This document shows, one piece after another, positions 1,192 to 10,179 of a stretch of DNA of 11,970 nucleotides. How positions within the stretch are numbered: position 1 is the first letter of the stretch; each line of letters starts with the position of its first letter. Below the pieces are notes generated by a model. The model was given only the letters and a program-made list of their open reading frames with translations, did no database searches and was not told the DNA's origin. A program made the position numbers and the translations under genes. This stretch comes from Fonticula alba ATCC 38817 (taxonomy: Eukaryota; Protista; Nucleariida), in assembly GCA_000388065.2 (NCBI GenBank), contig KB932214.1. One strand, 5' to 3'.

Positions 1192-2060
1192 NNNNNNNNN
1201 NNNNNNNNNNNNNNNNNNNNNNNNNNNNNNNNNNNNNNNNNNNNNNNNNNNNNNNNNNNNNNNNNNNNNNNNNNNNNNNNNNNNNNNNNNNNNNNNNNNN
1301 NNNNNNNNNNNNNNNNNNNNNNNNNNNNNNNNNNNNNNNNNNNNNNNNNNNNNNNNNNNNNNNNNNNNNNNNNNNNNNNNNNNNNNNNNNNNNNNNNNNN
1401 NNNNNNNNNNNNNNNNNNNNNNNNNNNNNNNNNNNNNNNNNNNNNNNNNNNNNNNNNNNNNNNNNNNNNNNNNNNNNNNNNNNNNNNNNNNNNNNNNNNN
1501 NNNNNNNNNNNNNNNNNNNNNNNNNNNNNNNNNNNNNNNNNNNNNNNNNNNNNNNNNNNNNNNNNNNNNNNNNNNNNNNNNNNNNNNNNNNNNNNNNNNN
1601 NNNNNNNNNNNNNNNNNNNNNNNNNNNNNNNNNNNNNNNNNNNNNNNNNNNNNNNNNNNNNNNNNNNNNNNNNNNNNNNNNNNNNNNNNNNNNNNNNNNN
1701 NNNNNNNNNNNNNNNNNNNNNNNNNNNNNNNNNNNNNNNNNNNNNNNNNNNNNNNNNNNNNNNNNNNNNNNNNNNNNNNNNNNNNNNNNNNNNNNNNNNN
1801 NNNNNNNNNNNNNNNNNNNNNNNNNNNNNNGGGGGGGGGGGGGGCCGCACCTCGCAGCCCGGCGACTGCAGCCACACCGGCAGCGTGGCGGTCGGGGCCG
1901 ACAGGAGCCCCAGCTGGGATTCCATGCTCTGGGAGGTGGTGGCGCCCTGTAGGTCCGCGGCCGAGGGGGCGTCCGCGTCGCCCCCGGCCCCGGGGGCCGC
2001 CATCAGGCCGAAGCGCATGGTGCGCGGACGCGCACCCTCCGTACCCGGCGGGGCGAACAT
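52..2060 (-). CDS. Hypothetical membrane protein, spliced and 3'-incomplete. Visible exons (minus strand): 2060-1851, 1051-524, 244-52. Further exons may lie in the gap 1192-1830 and beyond the left edge.
   Basis: ATG at 2060 in GCC-ATG context (MFAPPGTEG...WLQSPGCE) is followed by donor GTGCGG. Acceptor GCGCAG at 1052 opens QFIGQPLRQLVLQQALARLE...RPTRAYI, ending at donor GTACGT (523). A CTAAC branch (284-280) and acceptor CCCAG (245) open LRLRLAGIGLLMLDVALLLASIFLAVSS...SHRY, ending at donor GTATGT (51). Phases 0/0/1 are mutually consistent. One clear hydrophobic TM-like stretch. No family recognised. Confidence 0.65.
1192..1830. other. Assembly gap (639 N) inside gene 1, flanked by poly-G
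   Basis: N run with G tracts at 1094-1191 and 1831-1844. Confidence 0.99.
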
Positions 2061-3325: not shown

Positions 3326-5226
3326 ATGTCCGACAGATCGATGTGCGCTGCCAGCGGCGGTGGCCCGCTCGCGGCCAAGGAGCTGGCCGACTTCGCCCAA
3401 CAAGTGGGCCGGGCTGCCAGCGCGGGCCCGGACCCCGGCGCGGCGCTGGCCGCCCCCGAGTCCGTGCCCCACCCGGTTCCCCGGGCCACGGCGGCGGCCC
3501 GGGGCTGCCCCTTCCGCGGGGGCTCCGCTCGGCCGGTGGACAGCCTGCCCGGGCAGCAGCAGCTCCTCGTTCAGCCGGGCGACGGGCTGGCCACCGGCGG
3601 GCCGGTCCCGGGGGCCGGCCAGCGCGCGGCCGAGCTGGCCGGCGTCGACCATGTGCGATCGCTCGGCCCGCCCGTCCGCCCGCCCTCCCCCGCACGTGCC
3701 ATCTTCCCAGCACTGACCCTGTCGTTATTTTGTCTTCCCCCCCTCCCCCGCCCCCCCCCCCCCCCTGGGATCAGGCGGCGCTCCTGGCCGACGAGTGGGC
3801 AAGCATCTACTCGCCGGGGGGCTCGCCGGTGCTCGGGTCGCCGGTGACGGCCCGCCCGGGGCACGCCGTGTCGACGCCGCGGTGTCCCTTTTCCGCGGCC
3901 CTGGCCGGGGGCCCGGGGCTCGGGGCGCCCGGGTGGCACGGGCCCGGGGCGCTGTGGCCCGGGGCCGGGGCACCGCCCCCCGCGGCCGACGCCTACCAGG
4001 AGCTGGTGGCCGCGCCGGAGGACGTGGCCCGGCTGGACGCCCCGGCCGAGGCCGACGATGCGCCGGCCGAGTCGCTCCTCGACCCGGACACCCAGCGGCT
4101 CCTGCTCCGGGGGAGCGCCGGCGCGGCGGACCTCCTGTCCGGGCCGGGCCGCTTGCAGGCCGAGGCCGCGCGCGCGCATGCCGCCATTCGCGAGGACCCC
4201 ACGCTCGGGGGCGGGCGCTTTGCTCGGTTCATGGTGCGTGGCGCGGGTGCCGGGTCTTTTTCCTTCGTCCCCCCCCCCGGACCCAGGCTCCCGTTCCGAC
4301 ATGCCGCGTGGCCGCGCACCGCCACTGACTGACACCCCCACCGGATCTCCTTTCTCTCTCTGTGCGTGTGCGTCTGCGGCCCGGGCGGGCCGGCGGGCGC
4401 AGTTGGACCTGAGTGCCGGCGCCGCGACCATCCGGCCCGACGGCTCGGTGTCCGGCACGGCCGAGCCCCAGGCCGCCGACCGGCTCATCCTGCCCGGGGC
4501 CGATGACCAGGCCGGGCCCGAGGCCGAGGAGGACTTGTCCGGGGTCCAGGCGGCGGTGCAGGCCGCCGCGCGGGCCTTCGGCCTGCGCCAGCCGGCCGAC
4601 CGGCAGACCGCCCCGAGCACGACGGCCCCCGGCATGGCGGGAGACGACACGACCGTGGTCCCGGCGCCGCCGGGGCCCGGGCCGGAGGTGGTGGAGGCCG
4701 CGCGCCGGGCCGGCCTCCGGGCCTCGGAGGCGCCGGCCCCCGGGCCGGTCCTCACCTGCCCGATGACCGGGCGCCGGGTGGCCGTGCCGGCCGACGGCCC
4801 GGCCAGTGAGGCCGTGCGCCGGGCTCTGGGCGGGCCGCTGGCGGCCGCGCCGGCCGAGGCGCTGCCGGCCGCGTCGGCCGCCGCCCAGCAGTGCCCCTAC
4901 CTGTCGGCCAAGCTCCAGGGGGCCGAGCACCCGGCCGATGGGCAGGTGGCCGCGCACCACCCGGCCGGGTCCTGGGTCACGGCCTTCCGCCAGGCCATCG
5001 AGCCCCTGCGGCCGGAGCCCCGGCCCGGGCAGGCGCTCGACGAGTGGACCGAGTGGGAGGAGGAGACGCTCCCGGCGACCGGCTGGCGCCAGCACCGGTG
5101 GCTTGGCTGGGGCTATGAAGCGTGCGTGCCCGGGGTCCGGCCCCGGGGGCCCGTCTTGCGGCGTGCGATCGAGCCGGCTTGCTGACTCCCCCCCCCCCCC
5201 CCCCCCCCCCGCCCCCCCCCGCCCCG

Positions 5227-5262
<36 letters not shown>

Positions 5263-7867
5263 ACACGCACCACCGGCGTGCATGCATGCACAACATGGAC
5301 TCCCGCGCGCGCGCACACCTGCAGCTATCGCCGGGCGGACTTCACCGCGTACCGGCCTCGCTTCACGGCCCGCAGCCGGGCGCTCGAGCCGCTGTACCAG
5401 GCCCGCGCTGACCTCGGTCCCGGCGACCTGGCCGACGTGCTGGCCCTGGCGCGCGAGCTGTCCCTCGGCGGGCGGGCCGAGTCAGGTACGTGGGACAATC
5501 GCCCCCCTGCCCCGCCCCCCCCCCCCTCCCCTCCCGGTGTGTGTGTGTGTGTGTGTGGTGTGTGTGCTTCGCCCCTTGCCCGGCCTGTATCCTGACGCCT
5601 CGACCGGTTGGCCGGCCGGCCGGCCCCGACACCCAGCCGTCGCCCTGCTTGAGGCGGCCCTGGCCCCTGGGGGCGAGGTGTCGACGCCCGGGCTGGACTC
5701 GGACGTCGCGGCCGTCGCCGCCAGCCGGGCCGACCTCTGGCAGGAGCTCGGCCGGCTGCATGTGCAGCAGATGCGCGACGGGAGCGCCCTCGGGGCCCTC
5801 TGGGCCGCGGCCGGGATCCTCTACCCGGCGGAGGTGGCCGGCGCGTCGGCGGCCGGGTGGGGCCCGACCGAGGCGCCGGTCGCCGGCGTCCCGGCCGCGC
5901 CCGCGGCCCAGGTGCCCGGCATCTGGCTCGAATTGGCCGGGTGCTACCAGGCGGAGAAGTGCCGGCCGGAGCTCTTCAAATGTACGCTGCCCCCTGCTGC
6001 CCCGGTCCTCTGGCCGCCCGTGCTGACTGCTTGCTGTTGCCGGCCGCTTGCTTTGGTCTCCCCCTCCCCCGCCCCGCCCTCGGGTCCCGGCCAGGCGTCA
6101 TGCAGTGGCTGAACCTGGTCAGCCCTGGCCCGGAGCCCTTCGCGCCGGCCATGAACACCGAGCACTTCTTCGTGGACCTGGTGCGCGCGGTGGCCGGCGT
6201 CGGACAGCAGTGTGTCCAGGCCCTGGCGGCCCTGGGCCCGGACCGGGCGGATCACGGCCCCGAGCGGGCGCGGCTGCTCGATCGGCTGGCCGCATCGCAG
6301 GTGCGTCGCTGCTCGTTCCCCCGCCTCCTGGCTGCTGCTTCCCTTCTCGCCGCCGGGTGCCCGGCACGGGGTGCTCCGTCGGGTGGCCCCGGCGCGCCCC
6401 TCTTCCCTTGCGCTGACACCGCCGCCGCTCGGCACATGTTGCCGCGCCCCCCCCCCCTCCCCCGCGGCCGGCGGGGGGGTCGTGTCGCACACAGTCCGCC
6501 CTGTCGATGGTCCTGTCGGTGTCTCCCTCGCCGGAGGATGTGCGCTTCGCCTGTGAAAGCGCCACCATCATGGTGAACGCCCTGCTGGAGGCGCAGCGGC
6601 TGTCGGTGACCGGCGCCGGCGGGGCCGGCCCCGCGCCGGGGTCCCTCTCCTTCCGCCTGTACCTGGGGTACCTGCGCCTGGGCGGGCTGCTCGGTCGCGC
6701 CGGGGACCATGGGCCGGCGCTGGCGGCGCTTCGCCGGGCGCAGGAGGCCCTTCGGGGGTGGGCGCATGCCGCCGGCGCCGAGGGCGCCCCCTCCCGCCGG
6801 ACCCCCCGGCTGGACTACAACATGGGCATCAGGTGCGCGACACTCTGTCGGGGTGACAGCCGAAGGGGGGGAGGGGGGGGGGGGGGGGGGGATGGCCAGC
6901 CGCGGTACCACCTGCGCGAGGGGGGAGGGCCTAGCATACTGACCGCTGTGCTGTGTCTGCCGGATCGCTGTTGCGCGGGGCAGTTCTCTGGCTCTGGGCG
7001 CCCTGGAGGACGCCTGCGACCATTTTGCCTCCTCTCTGGCGAACCAGGTGTGTAAATGCCATGGCTGGCCATGCTCTTTTCTGCTCTCTCCTCTCTCTCT
7101 CTTTTCCCTTTTCCCTTTTCCCTTTTCTCTCTTCTCTCTTCTCTCTTCTCTCTCTTCTCTCTTCTCTCTCTTCTCTCTCTTCTCTCTTCTCTCTCTTCTC
7201 TCTCTTCTCTCTCTTCTCTCTTCTCTCTCCCCCTCCCCTTATCTCTTCTCTCTCTTCTCTCTTCTCTCTTCTCTCTTCTCTCTTCTCTCTCTTCTCTCTT
7301 CTCTCTTCTCTCTTCTCTCTCTTCTCTCTCTTCTCTCTTCTCTCTTCTCTCTTCTCTCTTCTCTCTTCTCTCTTCTCTCCTCTCTCCTCTCTCCCCCTCC
7401 CCTGATCTCCCCTCTCCCCCCTCCCCTCCATCTCCGCGCCACTTACACGCCCTCCACACCCCCCCACACCCCCTCCAAATGCCGCTCCCCAGCTGGAGGC
7501 CACTGACCACGCGGCCGAGGAAATGTACGCCTCAGAGGCGGAGGCCGCCGCCGCGGCGGAGCACGCCCTGCGCGGGCTGGCGATCGCCGATGCCGACGCC
7601 GCGGCGCCCGACTCCCCGATCCACGGGCTGCGCCGGGCCGCCCGGCACGCCCCCCCGGGGGCCCTCCTGCCGGCCGGGCACCCCTCCACCGCGCTGAGCC
7701 CCAGCGGCCAGGACGGCGACGCCGACACCTGGGAAGCCCTGCGCGTGACACTGGTGGAGCTGGGCGAGACGGCCCGGGCCAAGGCGGCTGCCAACCGGGA
7801 CCTGGCCGGCTGCCTGGCATGGGATCTCCCCCGGGGCAGGCTGGCCGCCGGGCCTCCAGGCCTTTGA
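3326..7867 (+). CDS. PEX5: PEX5-family peroxisomal targeting signal receptor (divergent TPR protein), 997 aa. join(3326..3652,3775..4233,4403..5121,5325..5485,5637..5981,6095..6300,6495..6832,6984..7047,7493..7867)
   Basis: All 8 introns are GT..AG with GTRYG-type donors and in-frame phases (0,0,2,1,1,0,2,0); spliced length is 2994 nt. Motifs matching PEX5 as I recall it: N-terminal Cys (MSDRSMC..GGPL), WASIY, WVTAF, PEX7 box DPTLGGGRFARFMLDLSAG. TPR matches: AVALLEAAL/ADLWQELG ~ AVLLFEAAV/EAWQYLG; PRLDYNMGISSLALGALEDACDHFASSLANQ ~ [58 protein letters not shown] ~ [27 protein letters not shown]. Confidence 0.88.
4192..4444 (+). other. PEX7-binding (PTS2 co-receptor) box of the PEX5-like protein, split by intron 2 (4234..4402)
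   Basis: Spliced peptide EDPTLGGGRFARFM|LDLSAGAATIRPDG aligns with human PEX5L [23 protein letters not shown] and plant PEX5 PKFQNSRFLQFVSKMSRGELII (recalled sequences). Confidence 0.7.
5187..5262. repeat. Near-pure poly-C tract in PEX5 intron 3
   Basis: About 75 nt of C interrupted by three G. Confidence 0.95.
7075..7430. repeat. Polypyrimidine TC-rich satellite (CTCTTCT / CTCTCTTCT units) filling PEX5 intron 8
   Basis: About 350 nt almost entirely C/T, with tandem 7- and 9-nt units in 7128-7380. Confidence 0.95.
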
Positions 7868-7968: not shown

Positions 7969-8475
7969 NNNNNNNNNNNNNNNNNNNNNNNNNNNNNNNN
8001 NNNNNNNNNNNNNNNNNNNNNNNNNNNNNNNNNNNNNNNNNNNNNNNNNNNNNNNNNNNNNNNNNNNNNNNNNNNNNNNNNNNNNNNNNNNNNNNNNNNN
8101 NNNNNNNNNNNNNNNNNNNNNNNNNNNNNNNNNNNNNNNNNNNNNNNNNNNNNNNNNNNNNNNNNNNNNNNNNNNNNNNNNNNNNNNNNNNNNNNNNNNN
8201 NNNNNNNNNNNNNNNNNNNNNNNNNNNNNNNNNNNNNNNNNNNNNNNNNNNNNNNNNNNNNNNNNNNNNNNNNNNNNNNNNNNNNNNNNNNNNNNNNNNN
8301 NNNNNNNNNNNNNNNNNNNNNNNNNNNNNNNNNNNNNNNNNNNNNNNNNNNNNNNNNNNNNNNNNNNNNNNNNNNNNNNNNNNNNNNNNNNNNNNNNNNN
8401 NNNNNNNNNNNNNNNNNNNNNNNNNNNNNNNNNNNNNNNNNNNNNNNNNNNNNNNNNNNNNNNNNNNNNNNNNNN
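7969..8475. other. Assembly gap (507 N)
   Basis: N run between the PEX5 3' end and gene 3. Confidence 0.99.
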
Positions 8476-8581
8476 NCCCCCCCCCAGCCCCTTCTGTGTC
8501 TCGCCAGGCCGGTTGCGTTGGTGCTCTGACCAGCCGCTCCCCCTCGTCCCCTCGCGGCCGCCTTGCTGCGTCCCTTCTCGC

Positions 8582-8632: not shown

Positions 8633-9769
8633 ATGTTCCACCTTGCTCAGCATGCTGGCCGCCAGGCCATGTCGGCCGGCCGGCCGACGATCGCCCGCGT
8701 GGCCGCCGCCCACCAGCAGGCGGCTCGCGGCCCGGAGGAGGCCAGGGCCACGCGGGCGCCCCCGAGGGCGGGCTACTCCTCCTCGCCCACGGGCCAGGGG
8801 GTGTGGCCGTCCTCCGGGCCGGGCGCCATCGGCCAGCAGGCCCTCAAGGTGGAGGCCGACAAGCGGGCCAACAAGGAGCCCCAGGAGCAGCTGGGCCCGC
8901 AGCAGCACCAACTCCACCAGCAGAAGGACCAGTCGTGGACGCGCACCGGCCCCGGCGGGGGACCCGCCCCCCACAAGCCCCTGTCGCACTCCGCCCCCGC
9001 CTCTGCCCATGGCCGCACTGACCCCGAGTCTGCATTTGTCTCCGGCCCGGCCGGGACCTCCGCCGCGCCGGGGTTCTTCACCAGGCTCCTTCGCAGGACC
9101 TCGCACACCCTCCACCTCGACACGATGCCCAGCATGAACAAGGACCACGGCAAGATGCCCGGCTCCGGCGCGGCCGCCGGCCAGCAGAAGCAGCACGGCG
9201 CCTCGCAGGCCAAGCAGCAGCAGCAGCAGCAGCATGCCGACAAGATGGACGCCCAGTCGGCCTCCTCCAGCCACAGCCAGATGCACTCGGAGGGCAGCCA
9301 CTCCGGCGAGTTCCAGGCCGCCGGGTCCTTCTACTCCAGCAGCTTCTCCCAGGTGGGCGACGAGAAGCCCAAGATCTCCCGCGCCCATGGCCAGTGGACC
9401 GCCGACCCGCAGGGGCACATCACCGGCAGCGCCGAGCGCTTCGTCGACTCGGGCGCCGGCGAGCCCAAGCACGAGCGCTTCGAGTACTCGCCCGAGGGGC
9501 GCCTGAAGCAGGTGGCCGGCGGCCAGCAGCAGGCCAAGCTCGGCGCCAGCCAGCAGGAGCAGCAGAAGCACCTTGGCTCCGGGGCCGCCGCCGCCGCCGG
9601 CGGCGCCGGTGCCAAGCAGCACCAGCAGCAGCAGCAGCATGGCCACCAGCAGATGGGCGGCGCCGCCTGCCCGCCGGGCGCCGACGCCCAGAAGAAGGCC
9701 GGCGCCGCTTGCCCGCCCGGCAGCAAGCAGCAGAAGGGCTCCAAGCAGCACCAGGGCCAGTGCGACTAA
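8633..9769 (+). CDS. Gln/Gly/Ala/His-rich hydrophilic protein (378 aa from ATG 8633) with a partial MLF (myeloid leukemia factor)-like segment. An upstream exon may lie in the gap, and there may be an internal intron or second start.
   Basis: Uninterrupted ORF with strong GC3 codon bias and CAG tracts, GCC-ATG context at 8633 and TAA at 9767-9769. It is preceded by an intron-like end (CTGAC 8526-8530, (GT)n, TCCCAG 8626). The segment SFYSSSFSQVGDEKPKISRA..Q....P.G.I......DSGAGEPK (9326-9469) resembles human MLF1 SFCSSSVMTYSKIGDEPPKVFQASTQTRRAPGGIKETRKAMRDSDSGLEK, aligned by eye from memory. Confidence 0.72.
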   Translation: MFHLAQHAGRQAMSAGRPTIARVAAAHQQAARGPEEARATRAPPRAGYSSSPTGQGVWPSSGPGAIGQQALKVEADKRANKEPQEQLGPQQHQLHQQKDQSWTRTGPGGGPAPHKPLSHSAPASAHGRTDPESAFVSGPAGTSAAPGFFTRLLRRTSHTLHLDTMPSMNKDHGKMPGSGAAAGQQKQHGASQAKQQQQQQHADKMDAQSASSSHSQMHSEGSHSGEFQAAGSFYSSSFSQVGDEKPKISRAHGQWTADPQGHITGSAERFVDSGAGEPKHERFEYSPEGRLKQVAGGQQQAKLGASQQEQQKHLGSGAAAAAGGAGAKQHQQQQQHGHQQMGGAACPPGADAQKKAGAACPPGSKQQKGSKQHQGQCD

Positions 9770-10003: not shown

Positions 10004-10179
10004 NNNNNNNNNNNNNNNNNNNNNNNNNNNNNNNNNNNNNNNNNNNNNNNNNNNNNNNNNNNNNNNNNNNNNNNNNNNNNNNNNNNNNNNNNNNNNNNNN
10101 NNNNNNNNNNNNNNNNNNNNNNNNNNNNNNNNNNNNNNNNNNNNNNNNNNNNNNNNNNNNNNNNNNNNNNNNNNNNNNN
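10004..10179. other. Assembly gap (176 N)
   Basis: N run between the convergent 3' ends of genes 3 and 4, followed by poly-G. Confidence 0.99.

What the first reader, a model, noticed from the sequence alone, without database searches (positions are those of the whole stretch)
3506..4900. Four heme-regulatory-type CP motifs in the N-terminal half of a PEX5
Seen: GCPFR (C at 3506), RCPFS (3883), TCPMT (4757) and QCPYL (4892). Apart from the N-terminal Cys (3344), these are the only cysteines in exons 1-3 (about 500 aa), and every one is Cys-Pro-hydrophobic. Established: CP[F/M/Y/V] is the heme regulatory motif of ALAS, heme oxygenase-2, holocytochrome c synthase and yeast Hap1. PEX5 imports catalase and is redox-controlled through its N-terminal Cys. 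I know of no PEX5 described with HRM arrays. Inference: a heme-sensing or heme-escorting peroxisomal import receptor that couples import to heme or oxygen status.
Basis: partly seen in the sequence, partly recalled or inferred. Interest (0 to 1): 0.82.

Follow-up and report, generated by a model that had tools for sequence, protein, structure and literature searches.

The report
Heme-motif-like cysteines in Fonticula PEX5
The slime-mould-like fungal relative Fonticula alba makes a very divergent peroxisome import receptor (PEX5) whose floppy front half carries four extra cysteines, each in the Cys-Pro-Phe/Met/Tyr pattern known from heme-sensing proteins; about 60 other PEX5 proteins sampled here lack this, but heme binding is untested.

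Summary
The window holds a nine-exon, expressed gene at 3326-7867 (+). It encodes NCBI "hypothetical protein H696_05792" of Fonticula alba, 997 aa. RNA contigs confirm all eight introns.

It is a real but very divergent PEX5:
- A PEX5 family profile matches residues 538-873 (hhalign probability 91%, E 1e-6).
- The best solved-structure matches are human PEX5.
- It keeps the N-terminal Cys, two WxxxF/Y motifs and a PEX7-binding box.
- Three of the four invariant PTS1-pocket asparagines are replaced.

In the first 520 residues the only cysteines are C7 and C61, C146, C381 and C426. The last four read CPF, CPF, CPM and CPY. No shuffle out of 20,000 reproduced this. They are also the only CP[FMY] in any reading frame of the surrounding 24.5 kb.

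In about 60 distinct other PEX5 sequences, the N-terminal half nearly always has only the conserved Cys. None has a Cys-Pro-hydrophobic motif.

The array is therefore real, non-random and unique among the PEX5 sampled. The heme-regulatory reading is the best available hypothesis, at roughly 0.4. It rests on motif resemblance only. No orthologue with an alignable N-terminus could be found, so conservation could not be tested. No paper linking PEX5 to heme-regulatory motifs was found.

The parts
3326..7867 (+). PEX5-family gene, nine exons, 997 aa (NCBI H696_05792, Fonticula alba)
   Evidence: Model is identical to P0001. All eight introns appear as GT..AG joints in RNA contigs. It is named a hypothetical protein of Fonticula alba.
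3344..3346 (+). Cys7, the conserved N-terminal Cys of PEX5 (the ubiquitin-acceptor Cys in studied PEX5, from established knowledge)
   Evidence: The equivalent Cys is invariant in PEX5 alignment A1 (C14) and lies within the first ~22 residues of all 39 complete-looking panel N-termini, which were picked for having a Cys there.
3506..3514 (+). CP motif 1: Cys61-Pro-Phe (AARG-CPF-RG), 9-mer net charge +2, His49 upstream
3796..3810 (+). WxxxY motif (W117 ASIY), a PEX14/PEX13-docking type pentapeptide
3883..3891 (+). CP motif 2: Cys146-Pro-Phe (STPR-CPF-SA), net charge +1, His139 upstream
4216..4432 (+). PEX7-binding-type box RFARFM|LDLSAGAATI (aa 257-272), split by intron 2 (4234-4402)
   Evidence: The regex F..F[VMIL]..[ILVM] is found at a comparable place in 23 of 75 panel PEX5 and once in P0001. 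The nearest feature clusters of the N-terminal half carry PF25098 PEX18_PEX21_C.
4757..4765 (+). CP motif 3: Cys381-Pro-Met (PVLT-CPM-TG, followed by RR), net charge 0
4892..4900 (+). CP motif 4: Cys426-Pro-Tyr (AAQQ-CPY-LS), net charge 0, His438 downstream
4973..4987 (+). WxxxF motif (W453 VTAF)
5431..7047 (+). TPR domain, aa 538-873, aligned to the PEX5 family profile. The PTS1-pocket Asn are replaced at A661, L799 and R807. R844 and N848 are kept.
   Evidence: hhalign probability 91%, E 1.1e-6. Invariant columns. PDB matches to human PEX5.
7724..7810 (+). C-terminal helical segment (DTWEALRVTLVELG...AANRDLAG) matching the PEX5 C-terminal bundle

Best explanation
The gene encodes the expressed, highly divergent PEX5-type peroxisomal import receptor of Fonticula alba. 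Its disordered N-terminal half has acquired four extra cysteines, each as Cys-Pro-Phe/Met/Tyr. PEX5 proteins normally keep only one Cys in that half. I read them as a selected array of CP-type heme regulatory motifs. In the reduced state each thiolate could bind ferric heme transiently, and oxidation to disulfides would abolish binding, as in heme oxygenase-2. Heme or redox state would then change how the receptor's unfolded N-terminal half behaves in its cycle of docking, membrane passage, Cys7 ubiquitination and extraction, and so tune import or receptor turnover. Shown here: the gene, its expression, PEX5 membership, the motifs, their non-randomness and their absence from other PEX5. Inferred: that the motifs bind heme, and any consequence for import.
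For: The gene model and expression are confirmed. PEX5 membership rests on several results. hhalign gives probability 91%, E 1.1e-6 over 238 columns. The family HMM scores 18.5 bits against a best of 5.0 bits in 1000 shuffles, in three collinear stretches. The top PDB matches are human PEX5. The language-model and structure neighbours are PEX5 clusters. The motif array is non-random: 0 of 20,000 shuffles, and the only CP[FMY] in six frames of 24.5 kb. The motifs share no wider flanking similarity, so they are not copies of one duplicated segment (contexts). PEX5 N-terminal halves elsewhere are Cys-poor. Of 39 complete-looking N-termini, 31 have only the conserved Cys and 5 have one extra. The two scans (51 environmental ORFs, about 15,000 aa; 23 database PEX5, about 6,800 aa), which share some sequences, found no CP-hydrophobic motif in their N-terminal parts. 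The motif form fits published criteria: CP plus hydrophobic, non-negative 9-mer charge, location in a disordered region, and several copies as in BACH1 (PMC6356037, PMC11101860). Heme control of organelle import through CP motifs has a precedent in ALAS, per the reference to Lathrop and Timko in PMC11101860 and PMC6356037.
Against: There is no biochemical evidence. Published work states that a CP dipeptide alone does not guarantee heme binding (PMC6356037). Two of the four 9-mers have net charge 0, and the surroundings are Ala/Gly-rich. No orthologue with an alignable N-terminus was found, so there is no evidence from conservation. A proteome-wide count of CP-hydrophobic motifs in Fonticula disordered regions was not possible. 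Nearby His residues are no more frequent than expected. The eroded PTS1 pocket means the link to catalase import is unproven for this receptor.
Confidence: 0.4

Rival explanations
1. The four Cys are thiol redox-switch or extra thioester-ubiquitin acceptor sites without heme. They would form disulfides (for example C61-C146 and C381-C426, or with C7) under oxidative stress and gate the receptor cycle, extending the known redox sensitivity of the PEX5 N-terminal Cys.
For: They are the only Cys besides C7 in the disordered half. Other PEX5 avoid extra Cys there, which suggests that Cys in this region has consequences. PEX5 redox control through its N-terminal Cys is established knowledge for mammals and was not tested here.
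Against: This does not explain why every Cys is followed by Pro and then Phe, Met or Tyr, which is the statistically striking part. No known redox switch needs that context, except the heme-motif disulfide switch of HO-2.
Confidence: 0.2
2. CP[FMY] is a lineage-specific short linear docking motif for an unknown protein partner, such as a peroxin, chaperone or prolyl isomerase. It might compensate for the low number of WxxxF/Y motifs.
For: The tripeptide recurs four times with unrelated flanks in a disordered region, the usual signature of a short linear motif. Only two WxxxF/Y motifs are present, against a panel range of 0-8 with about 2-7 typical.
Against: I know of no domain that recognises Cys-Pro-aromatic. 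PEX14 binds amphipathic helices, which Pro disfavours (established knowledge, not tested). No other PEX5 has the motif.
Confidence: 0.13
3. It is a chance or neutral quirk: the Cys arose by mutation in a fast-evolving, very GC-rich, Pro-rich disordered region, and the pattern has no function.
For: The protein is an orphan in sequence, so there is no conservation evidence. Pro makes up 12% of the region, and CP follows 13% of Cys locally. The motif class and the region were chosen after seeing the data. With the loosest definition (any 4 of 12 Cys as CP-hydrophobic), my own estimate is roughly one such protein per ~6000-gene proteome.
Against: No shuffle out of 20,000 gave the array, with analytic estimates of 4e-10 to 3e-7. 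None of about 500 other local Cys is CP[FMY]. F, M and Y together make up only 3.8% of the region, and all four P[FMY] dipeptides follow Cys. The PEX5 family otherwise excludes Cys from this half.
Confidence: 0.15
4. The Cys bind a metal other than heme iron (Cu(I), Zn or an Fe-S cluster).
For: There are four thiols in a flexible region.
Against: The Cys are spread over 365 residues with no CxxC or CxC spacing. Cys-Pro-aromatic is not a known metal-site signature (my knowledge).
Confidence: 0.05

Closest known systems
PEX5 long-type receptors (human PEX5L, plant and amoebozoan PEX5), which act as PTS1 receptor and PEX7 co-receptor
   Same: A conserved Cys near the N-terminus, a disordered N-terminal half with WxxxF/Y motifs, a PEX7-binding box, and a C-terminal TPR domain plus helical bundle that align collinearly.
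   Different: It has four extra Cys, all CP[FMY], where other PEX5 have none. It has only two WxxxF/Y motifs. Three of the four invariant PTS1-pocket Asn are replaced. It is so divergent that Pfam and plain sequence searches miss it. At 997 aa it has long Ala/Gly/Pro-rich inserts.
Proteins with arrays of CP-type heme regulatory motifs: BACH1 (six CP), ALAS1/2, HO-2, Hap1, IRP2
   Same: Several Cys-Pro-hydrophobic motifs in disordered regions. RCPF and GCPFR resemble the ALAS and HO-2 motifs as I recall them. ALAS shows that CP motifs can put organelle import under heme control (PMC6356037, PMC11101860).
   Different: Heme binding here is untested. The carrier is an import receptor, not a cargo presequence, a transcription factor or a heme enzyme. 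There is no sequence homology to those proteins beyond the tripeptide.
Redox control of mammalian PEX5 through Cys11
   Same: A thiol in the unfolded N-terminal part of the receptor couples import to cellular redox state (established knowledge).
   Different: That mechanism uses the single conserved Cys. Here there are four further Cys in a specific sequence context.

Membership tests
PEX5 (peroxisomal import receptor) | C-terminal TPR domain homologous to PEX5 TPRs and the C-terminal bundle | tested here: met
   hhalign against an 18-sequence PEX5 alignment: probability 91%, E 1.1e-6, aa 538-873. Family HMM 18.5 bits against at most 5.0 bits in 1000 shuffles. Top PDB matches are human PEX5, E 0.012-0.02. 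Atlas neighbours are PEX5 clusters. Pfam TPR models do not reach E <= 1.
PEX5 (peroxisomal import receptor) | Conserved Cys within about the first 20 residues | tested here: met
   Cys7. The column is invariant in A1.
PEX5 (peroxisomal import receptor) | WxxxF/Y docking pentapeptides in a disordered N-terminal half | tested here: met
   Two motifs, W117ASIY and W453VTAF. That is fewer than in most panel members.
PEX5 (peroxisomal import receptor) | Asn ladder and Arg of the PTS1-binding pocket (A1 invariants N496, N596, N604, N631, R627) | tested here: not met
   In the hhalign alignment these columns pair with A661, L799, R807, N848 and R844. Three of four Asn are lost. Local alignment confidence is moderate.
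PEX5 long type / PEX7 co-receptors | PEX7-binding box (F..F[VMIL]..[ILVM]..G) | tested here: met
   RFARFMLDLSAGAATI at aa 257-272. The same pattern occurs in 23 of 75 panel PEX5. PF25098-bearing clusters are the nearest to the N-terminal half. Binding itself was not tested.
CP-type heme regulatory motif | Cys-Pro dipeptide followed by a hydrophobic residue | tested here: met
   CPF, CPF, CPM and CPY.
CP-type heme regulatory motif | Exposed or disordered location, and non-negative net charge of the 9-mer | tested here: met
   The N-terminal half is 45% Ala+Gly+Pro, with about 20% order-promoting residues. Predicted-structure confidence for the whole protein is low (Atlas mean pLDDT 0.49). Net charges are +2, +1, 0 and 0. 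Criteria come from PMC6356037.
CP-type heme regulatory motif | Cys-dependent, reversible heme binding with a functional effect | not testable with these tools
   This needs spectroscopy and mutants. PMC6356037 notes that CP motifs do not always bind heme.
CP-type heme regulatory motif | Conservation of the motifs in orthologues | not testable with these tools
   No relative with an alignable N-terminus was found. Exon 3 against 1.84 billion representatives found only itself. Word searches and metagenome loci also found nothing.

The most novel reading that the evidence does not exclude
The receptor is a heme carrier. Heme bound to the four CP motifs rides on the unfolded N-terminal half of PEX5 into the peroxisome. 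It is stripped off in the lumen when the receptor is pulled back out as an unfolded chain after Cys7 ubiquitination. This would supply heme to matrix enzymes such as catalase. It would explain why a receptor with an eroded PTS1 pocket is kept and expressed.
Probability: 0.08. Interest if true: 0.9.

Novelty: new variant of a known kind. Interest (0 to 1): 0.6.

Why it matters
PEX5 is among the most-studied import receptors, and its N-terminal half is usually kept free of cysteines apart from the one used for ubiquitination. A natural PEX5 with four heme-motif-like cysteines would be the first hint that cofactor (heme) or redox status acts directly on the peroxisomal receptor. That bears on how heme enzymes such as catalase are matched with their cofactor and how import responds to oxygen stress. 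The claim can be tested directly with short recombinant fragments. Separately, this is a previously unnamed PEX5 ("hypothetical protein") of a key lineage beside the fungi. It has a PEX7-binding box like animal, plant and amoebozoan PEX5, and an eroded PTS1 pocket. This is relevant to how fungal PEX5/PEX20 division of labour evolved.

Tried and rejected
- **Plain sequence searches found nothing.** Pfam gave no family at E <= 1. PDB phmmer with the whole protein, and with aa 1-300, 500-720, 545-700 and 690-860, gave no PEX5 match.
- **Relatives of the N-terminus were not found.** phmmer with exon 3 against 1.84 billion representatives found only itself. Word-indexed searches with aa 500-997 and 640-775 found only itself. 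A back-translated scan of metagenome contigs gave 48 pattern matches, none of them a relative.
- **Structure prediction was unusable.** AlphaFold2 on aa 500-997 without an alignment gave mean pLDDT 46, too poor for a fold search, so none was run.
- **GC3-based calling of coding frames** to build a larger Fonticula protein sample was not discriminating enough in this ~77% GC DNA. I used all six-frame ORFs of the 24.5-kb locus as a cruder baseline instead.
- **The profile search for more PEX5 was saturated** by generic TPR proteins and returned only 24 PEX5. It cannot show whether Fonticula has a second, canonical PEX5.
- **Rejected: a duplicated segment as the source of the four motifs.** The flanks are unrelated.
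- **Rejected: a DNA-composition artefact.** Only 13% of local Cys are followed by Pro, and none elsewhere by P[FMY].
- **His enrichment near the motifs** was considered and found unremarkable.

Full report
**Organism and gene.** Earlier notes of this scan name the genome as Fonticula alba, and the database record of the protein agrees. The window is about 77% G+C.

I modelled a nine-exon gene on the + strand: 3326-3652, 3775-4233, 4403-5121, 5325-5485, 5637-5981, 6095-6300, 6495-6832, 6984-7047 and 7493-7867. It encodes 997 aa. A search of 1.84 billion representative proteins with exon 3 returned one protein, P0001. It is identical to my model and is named "hypothetical protein H696_05792 [Fonticula alba]".

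Contigs of four RNA runs show all eight introns as GT..AG joints at the modelled positions. The listed contig pieces over three of the four motifs (C146, C381, C426) show no differing letters, and the tables report none anywhere. The gene is therefore real, spliced and expressed.

**The observation.** Residues 1-520 hold no other Cys. The seven Cys of the C-terminal half are followed by Y, R, V, V, E, D and L.

- In 20,000 shuffles of the N-terminal half, four CP occurred 15 times. Four CP[FMY], or four CP-hydrophobic, never occurred.
- The analytic expectations are 4e-10 and 3e-7.
- F, M and Y together make up 3.8% of the region, and all four P[FMY] dipeptides follow a Cys.
- As a local control for DNA composition, I translated all six frames of the 24.5-kb locus around the gene. 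ORFs of 120 aa or more held 509 Cys, 67 CP, 11 CP-hydrophobic and 4 CP[FMY].
- Those four are the PEX5 motifs and nothing else (Fisher p = 1.8e-9).
- The flanks of the four motifs are unrelated, so the motifs are not copies of one duplicated segment.

My own estimate allows for about 6000 proteins and a free choice of motif. The loosest definition (any 4 of 12 Cys as CP-hydrophobic) would give about one such protein per proteome. The natural definitions (all non-conserved Cys of the disordered half; residues F/M/Y) give about 1e-3 or less. A true proteome-wide count could not be made.

**Is it PEX5?** Simple searches fail. Pfam gives nothing at E <= 1. PDB phmmer with the whole protein gives nothing. 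Word-indexed searches find only the protein itself.

Evidence came from four directions:
- *Solved structures.* With aa 830-997 or 775-880 as query, the best matches among 177,635 solved-structure sequences are human PEX5 (five of the top six), with PEX5-related protein also listed at weaker E. E is 0.012-0.02, in two collinear stretches (RLDYNMGIS...HFASSLANQ and DTWEALRVTLVELG...RDLAG).
- *ESM Atlas.* The nearest named clusters to the full protein are almost all PEX5 (172-199 shared features). The two best structural rows are PEX5 clusters (TM 0.54 and 0.51 by the match).
- *A family profile built here.* I scanned metagenome contigs for a degenerate DNA pattern encoding WN[KR]LGA[ST]LAN. From the matches I extracted 51 long ORFs. 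Their HMM scores P0001 at 18.5 bits (E 5.6e-5). The best of 1000 composition-matched shuffles scores 5.0 bits. The match falls in three collinear stretches.
- *Profile comparison.* hhalign of an 18-sequence full-length PEX5 alignment (A1) against P0001 gives probability 91%, E 1.1e-6, over 238 columns from TPR1 to TPR7 (aa 538-873).

The N-terminal half also has the PEX5 landmarks:
- Cys7 (the column is invariant in A1).
- Two WxxxF/Y motifs.
- A PEX7-binding-type box, RFARFMLDLSAGAATI. The same pattern occurs at a comparable place in 23 of 75 panel PEX5. The nearest Atlas clusters of the N-terminal half carry PF25098 PEX18_PEX21_C.

One defining feature fails. Of the invariant pocket residues in A1 (N496, N596, N604, N631, R627), the hhalign alignment pairs three Asn with A661, L799 and R807. 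Only N848 and R844 are kept. This agrees with another first-stage note on the same gene (s1-065495).

The protein is therefore a PEX5-family receptor, probably still a PEX7 co-receptor. Whether it binds classical PTS1 is doubtful. Whether Fonticula has a second, canonical PEX5 could not be determined, because the profile search was saturated by generic TPR proteins. Unchecked scan notes report PTS1-like ends on other Fonticula proteins.

**How unusual are the cysteines for a PEX5?** In the 51 environmental PEX5 ORFs, the N-terminal parts (15,000 residues) hold 64 Cys and 2 CP. Both CP lie in doubtful upstream ORF extensions. There is no CP-hydrophobic motif. In 23 database PEX5 (P0002-P0025; Amoebozoa and others) there are 17 Cys and no CP in 6,757 residues. 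Of 39 complete-looking N-termini, 31 have only the conserved Cys and 5 have one extra. The three with more lack the PEX5 N-terminal consensus and are probably ORF artefacts. PEX5 thus normally excludes Cys from this half. Fonticula adds four, all in one tripeptide context.

**Reading the motifs.** Published work defines CP motifs as the best-explored heme regulatory motifs. They are short, surface-exposed stretches with a coordinating Cys followed by Pro. Binding is favoured by a positive net charge and by hydrophobic residues, and disfavoured by a negative charge. A CP dipeptide alone does not guarantee binding (PMC6356037). Such motifs typically sit in regions of very low structural confidence, and BACH1 has six (PMC11101860).

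The four 9-mers here are AARGCPFRG (+2), STPRCPFSA (+1), PVLTCPMTG (0, with RR just beyond) and AAQQCPYLS (0). The region is 45% Ala+Gly+Pro. The form therefore fits, most clearly for motifs 1 and 2. Nearby His residues (H49, H139, H438) are no more frequent than chance.

Full-text searches found no paper that combines PEX5 with heme regulatory motifs or Cys-Pro. None combines Fonticula with PEX5. An unchecked scan note reports CPV motifs in Fonticula ALAS.

**Mechanism.**
- *Shown:* an expressed PEX5-family receptor with a non-random, family-unique array of four CP[FMY] in its disordered half.
- *Inferred, from what CP motifs do elsewhere:* reduced thiolates bind ferric heme reversibly. Binding, or oxidation to disulfides, alters the behaviour of the unfolded N-terminal half during docking, translocation, Cys7 ubiquitination or extraction. 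Import or receptor stability would then follow heme or redox status.

I give this 0.4. The rivals are a heme-independent thiol switch (0.2), an unknown docking motif (0.13), a neutral quirk (0.15) and other metals (0.05). The boldest reading that the evidence does not exclude is a heme ferry into the peroxisome (0.08).

**Limits.** There is no biochemistry, no orthologue for a conservation test and no proteome-wide baseline. The AlphaFold model of the TPR half was too poor to use.

**Verdict.** This is a new variant of known kinds, a PEX5 receptor carrying a heme-regulatory-type motif array. Interest 0.6.

Noticed in passing
window 5431-7047 (aa 538-873): Three of the four Asn that are invariant in the PEX5 panel's PTS1 pocket are replaced (A661, L799, R807), while R844 and N848 are kept. 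The receptor may not bind classical PTS1, yet it keeps a PEX7-binding box. This matches scan note s1-065495.
   Followed up: partly
window 4216-4233 + 4403-4432: A PEX7-binding box of the animal, plant and amoebozoan PEX5 type is present in a lineage next to the fungi, which use separate PEX20-type co-receptors. This is relevant to when the PEX5/PEX20 split arose.
   Followed up: partly
window 5188-5262, 3751-3765, 7084-7403: The introns carry long homopolymer and microsatellite tracts: poly-C runs of 23 and 36 nt in intron 3, 15 nt in intron 1, and a ~320-nt CT-only tract in intron 8. CA/GT repeats occur in introns 3 and 4.
   Followed up: no
window 3586-3909: RNA contig word depth jumps to 150-360 here, against about 8 over the rest of the gene. 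Loose ends lie at the poly-C tract (3734-3766). This probably comes from unrelated C-rich or low-complexity contigs rather than from a separate abundant transcript.
   Followed up: no
window 8633-9769 (+); L001 15308-16444: The downstream neighbour is an intronless 378-aa gene with very high GC3 (0.95). Its product is Gln/His/Ala-rich and of low complexity, with no Pfam hit on record.
   Followed up: no
window 1192-1830, 7969-8476, 10004-10179: Three assembly gaps (runs of N), each flanked by G- or C-homopolymers. The PEX5 coding sequence itself is gap-free.
   Followed up: no
loci L002-L119 (metagenome contigs): In PEX5 from many lineages, the N-terminal half almost always has exactly one Cys, the conserved one near the start. 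This is a strong family-wide avoidance of Cys, seen here in 31 of 39 complete N-termini.
   Followed up: yes
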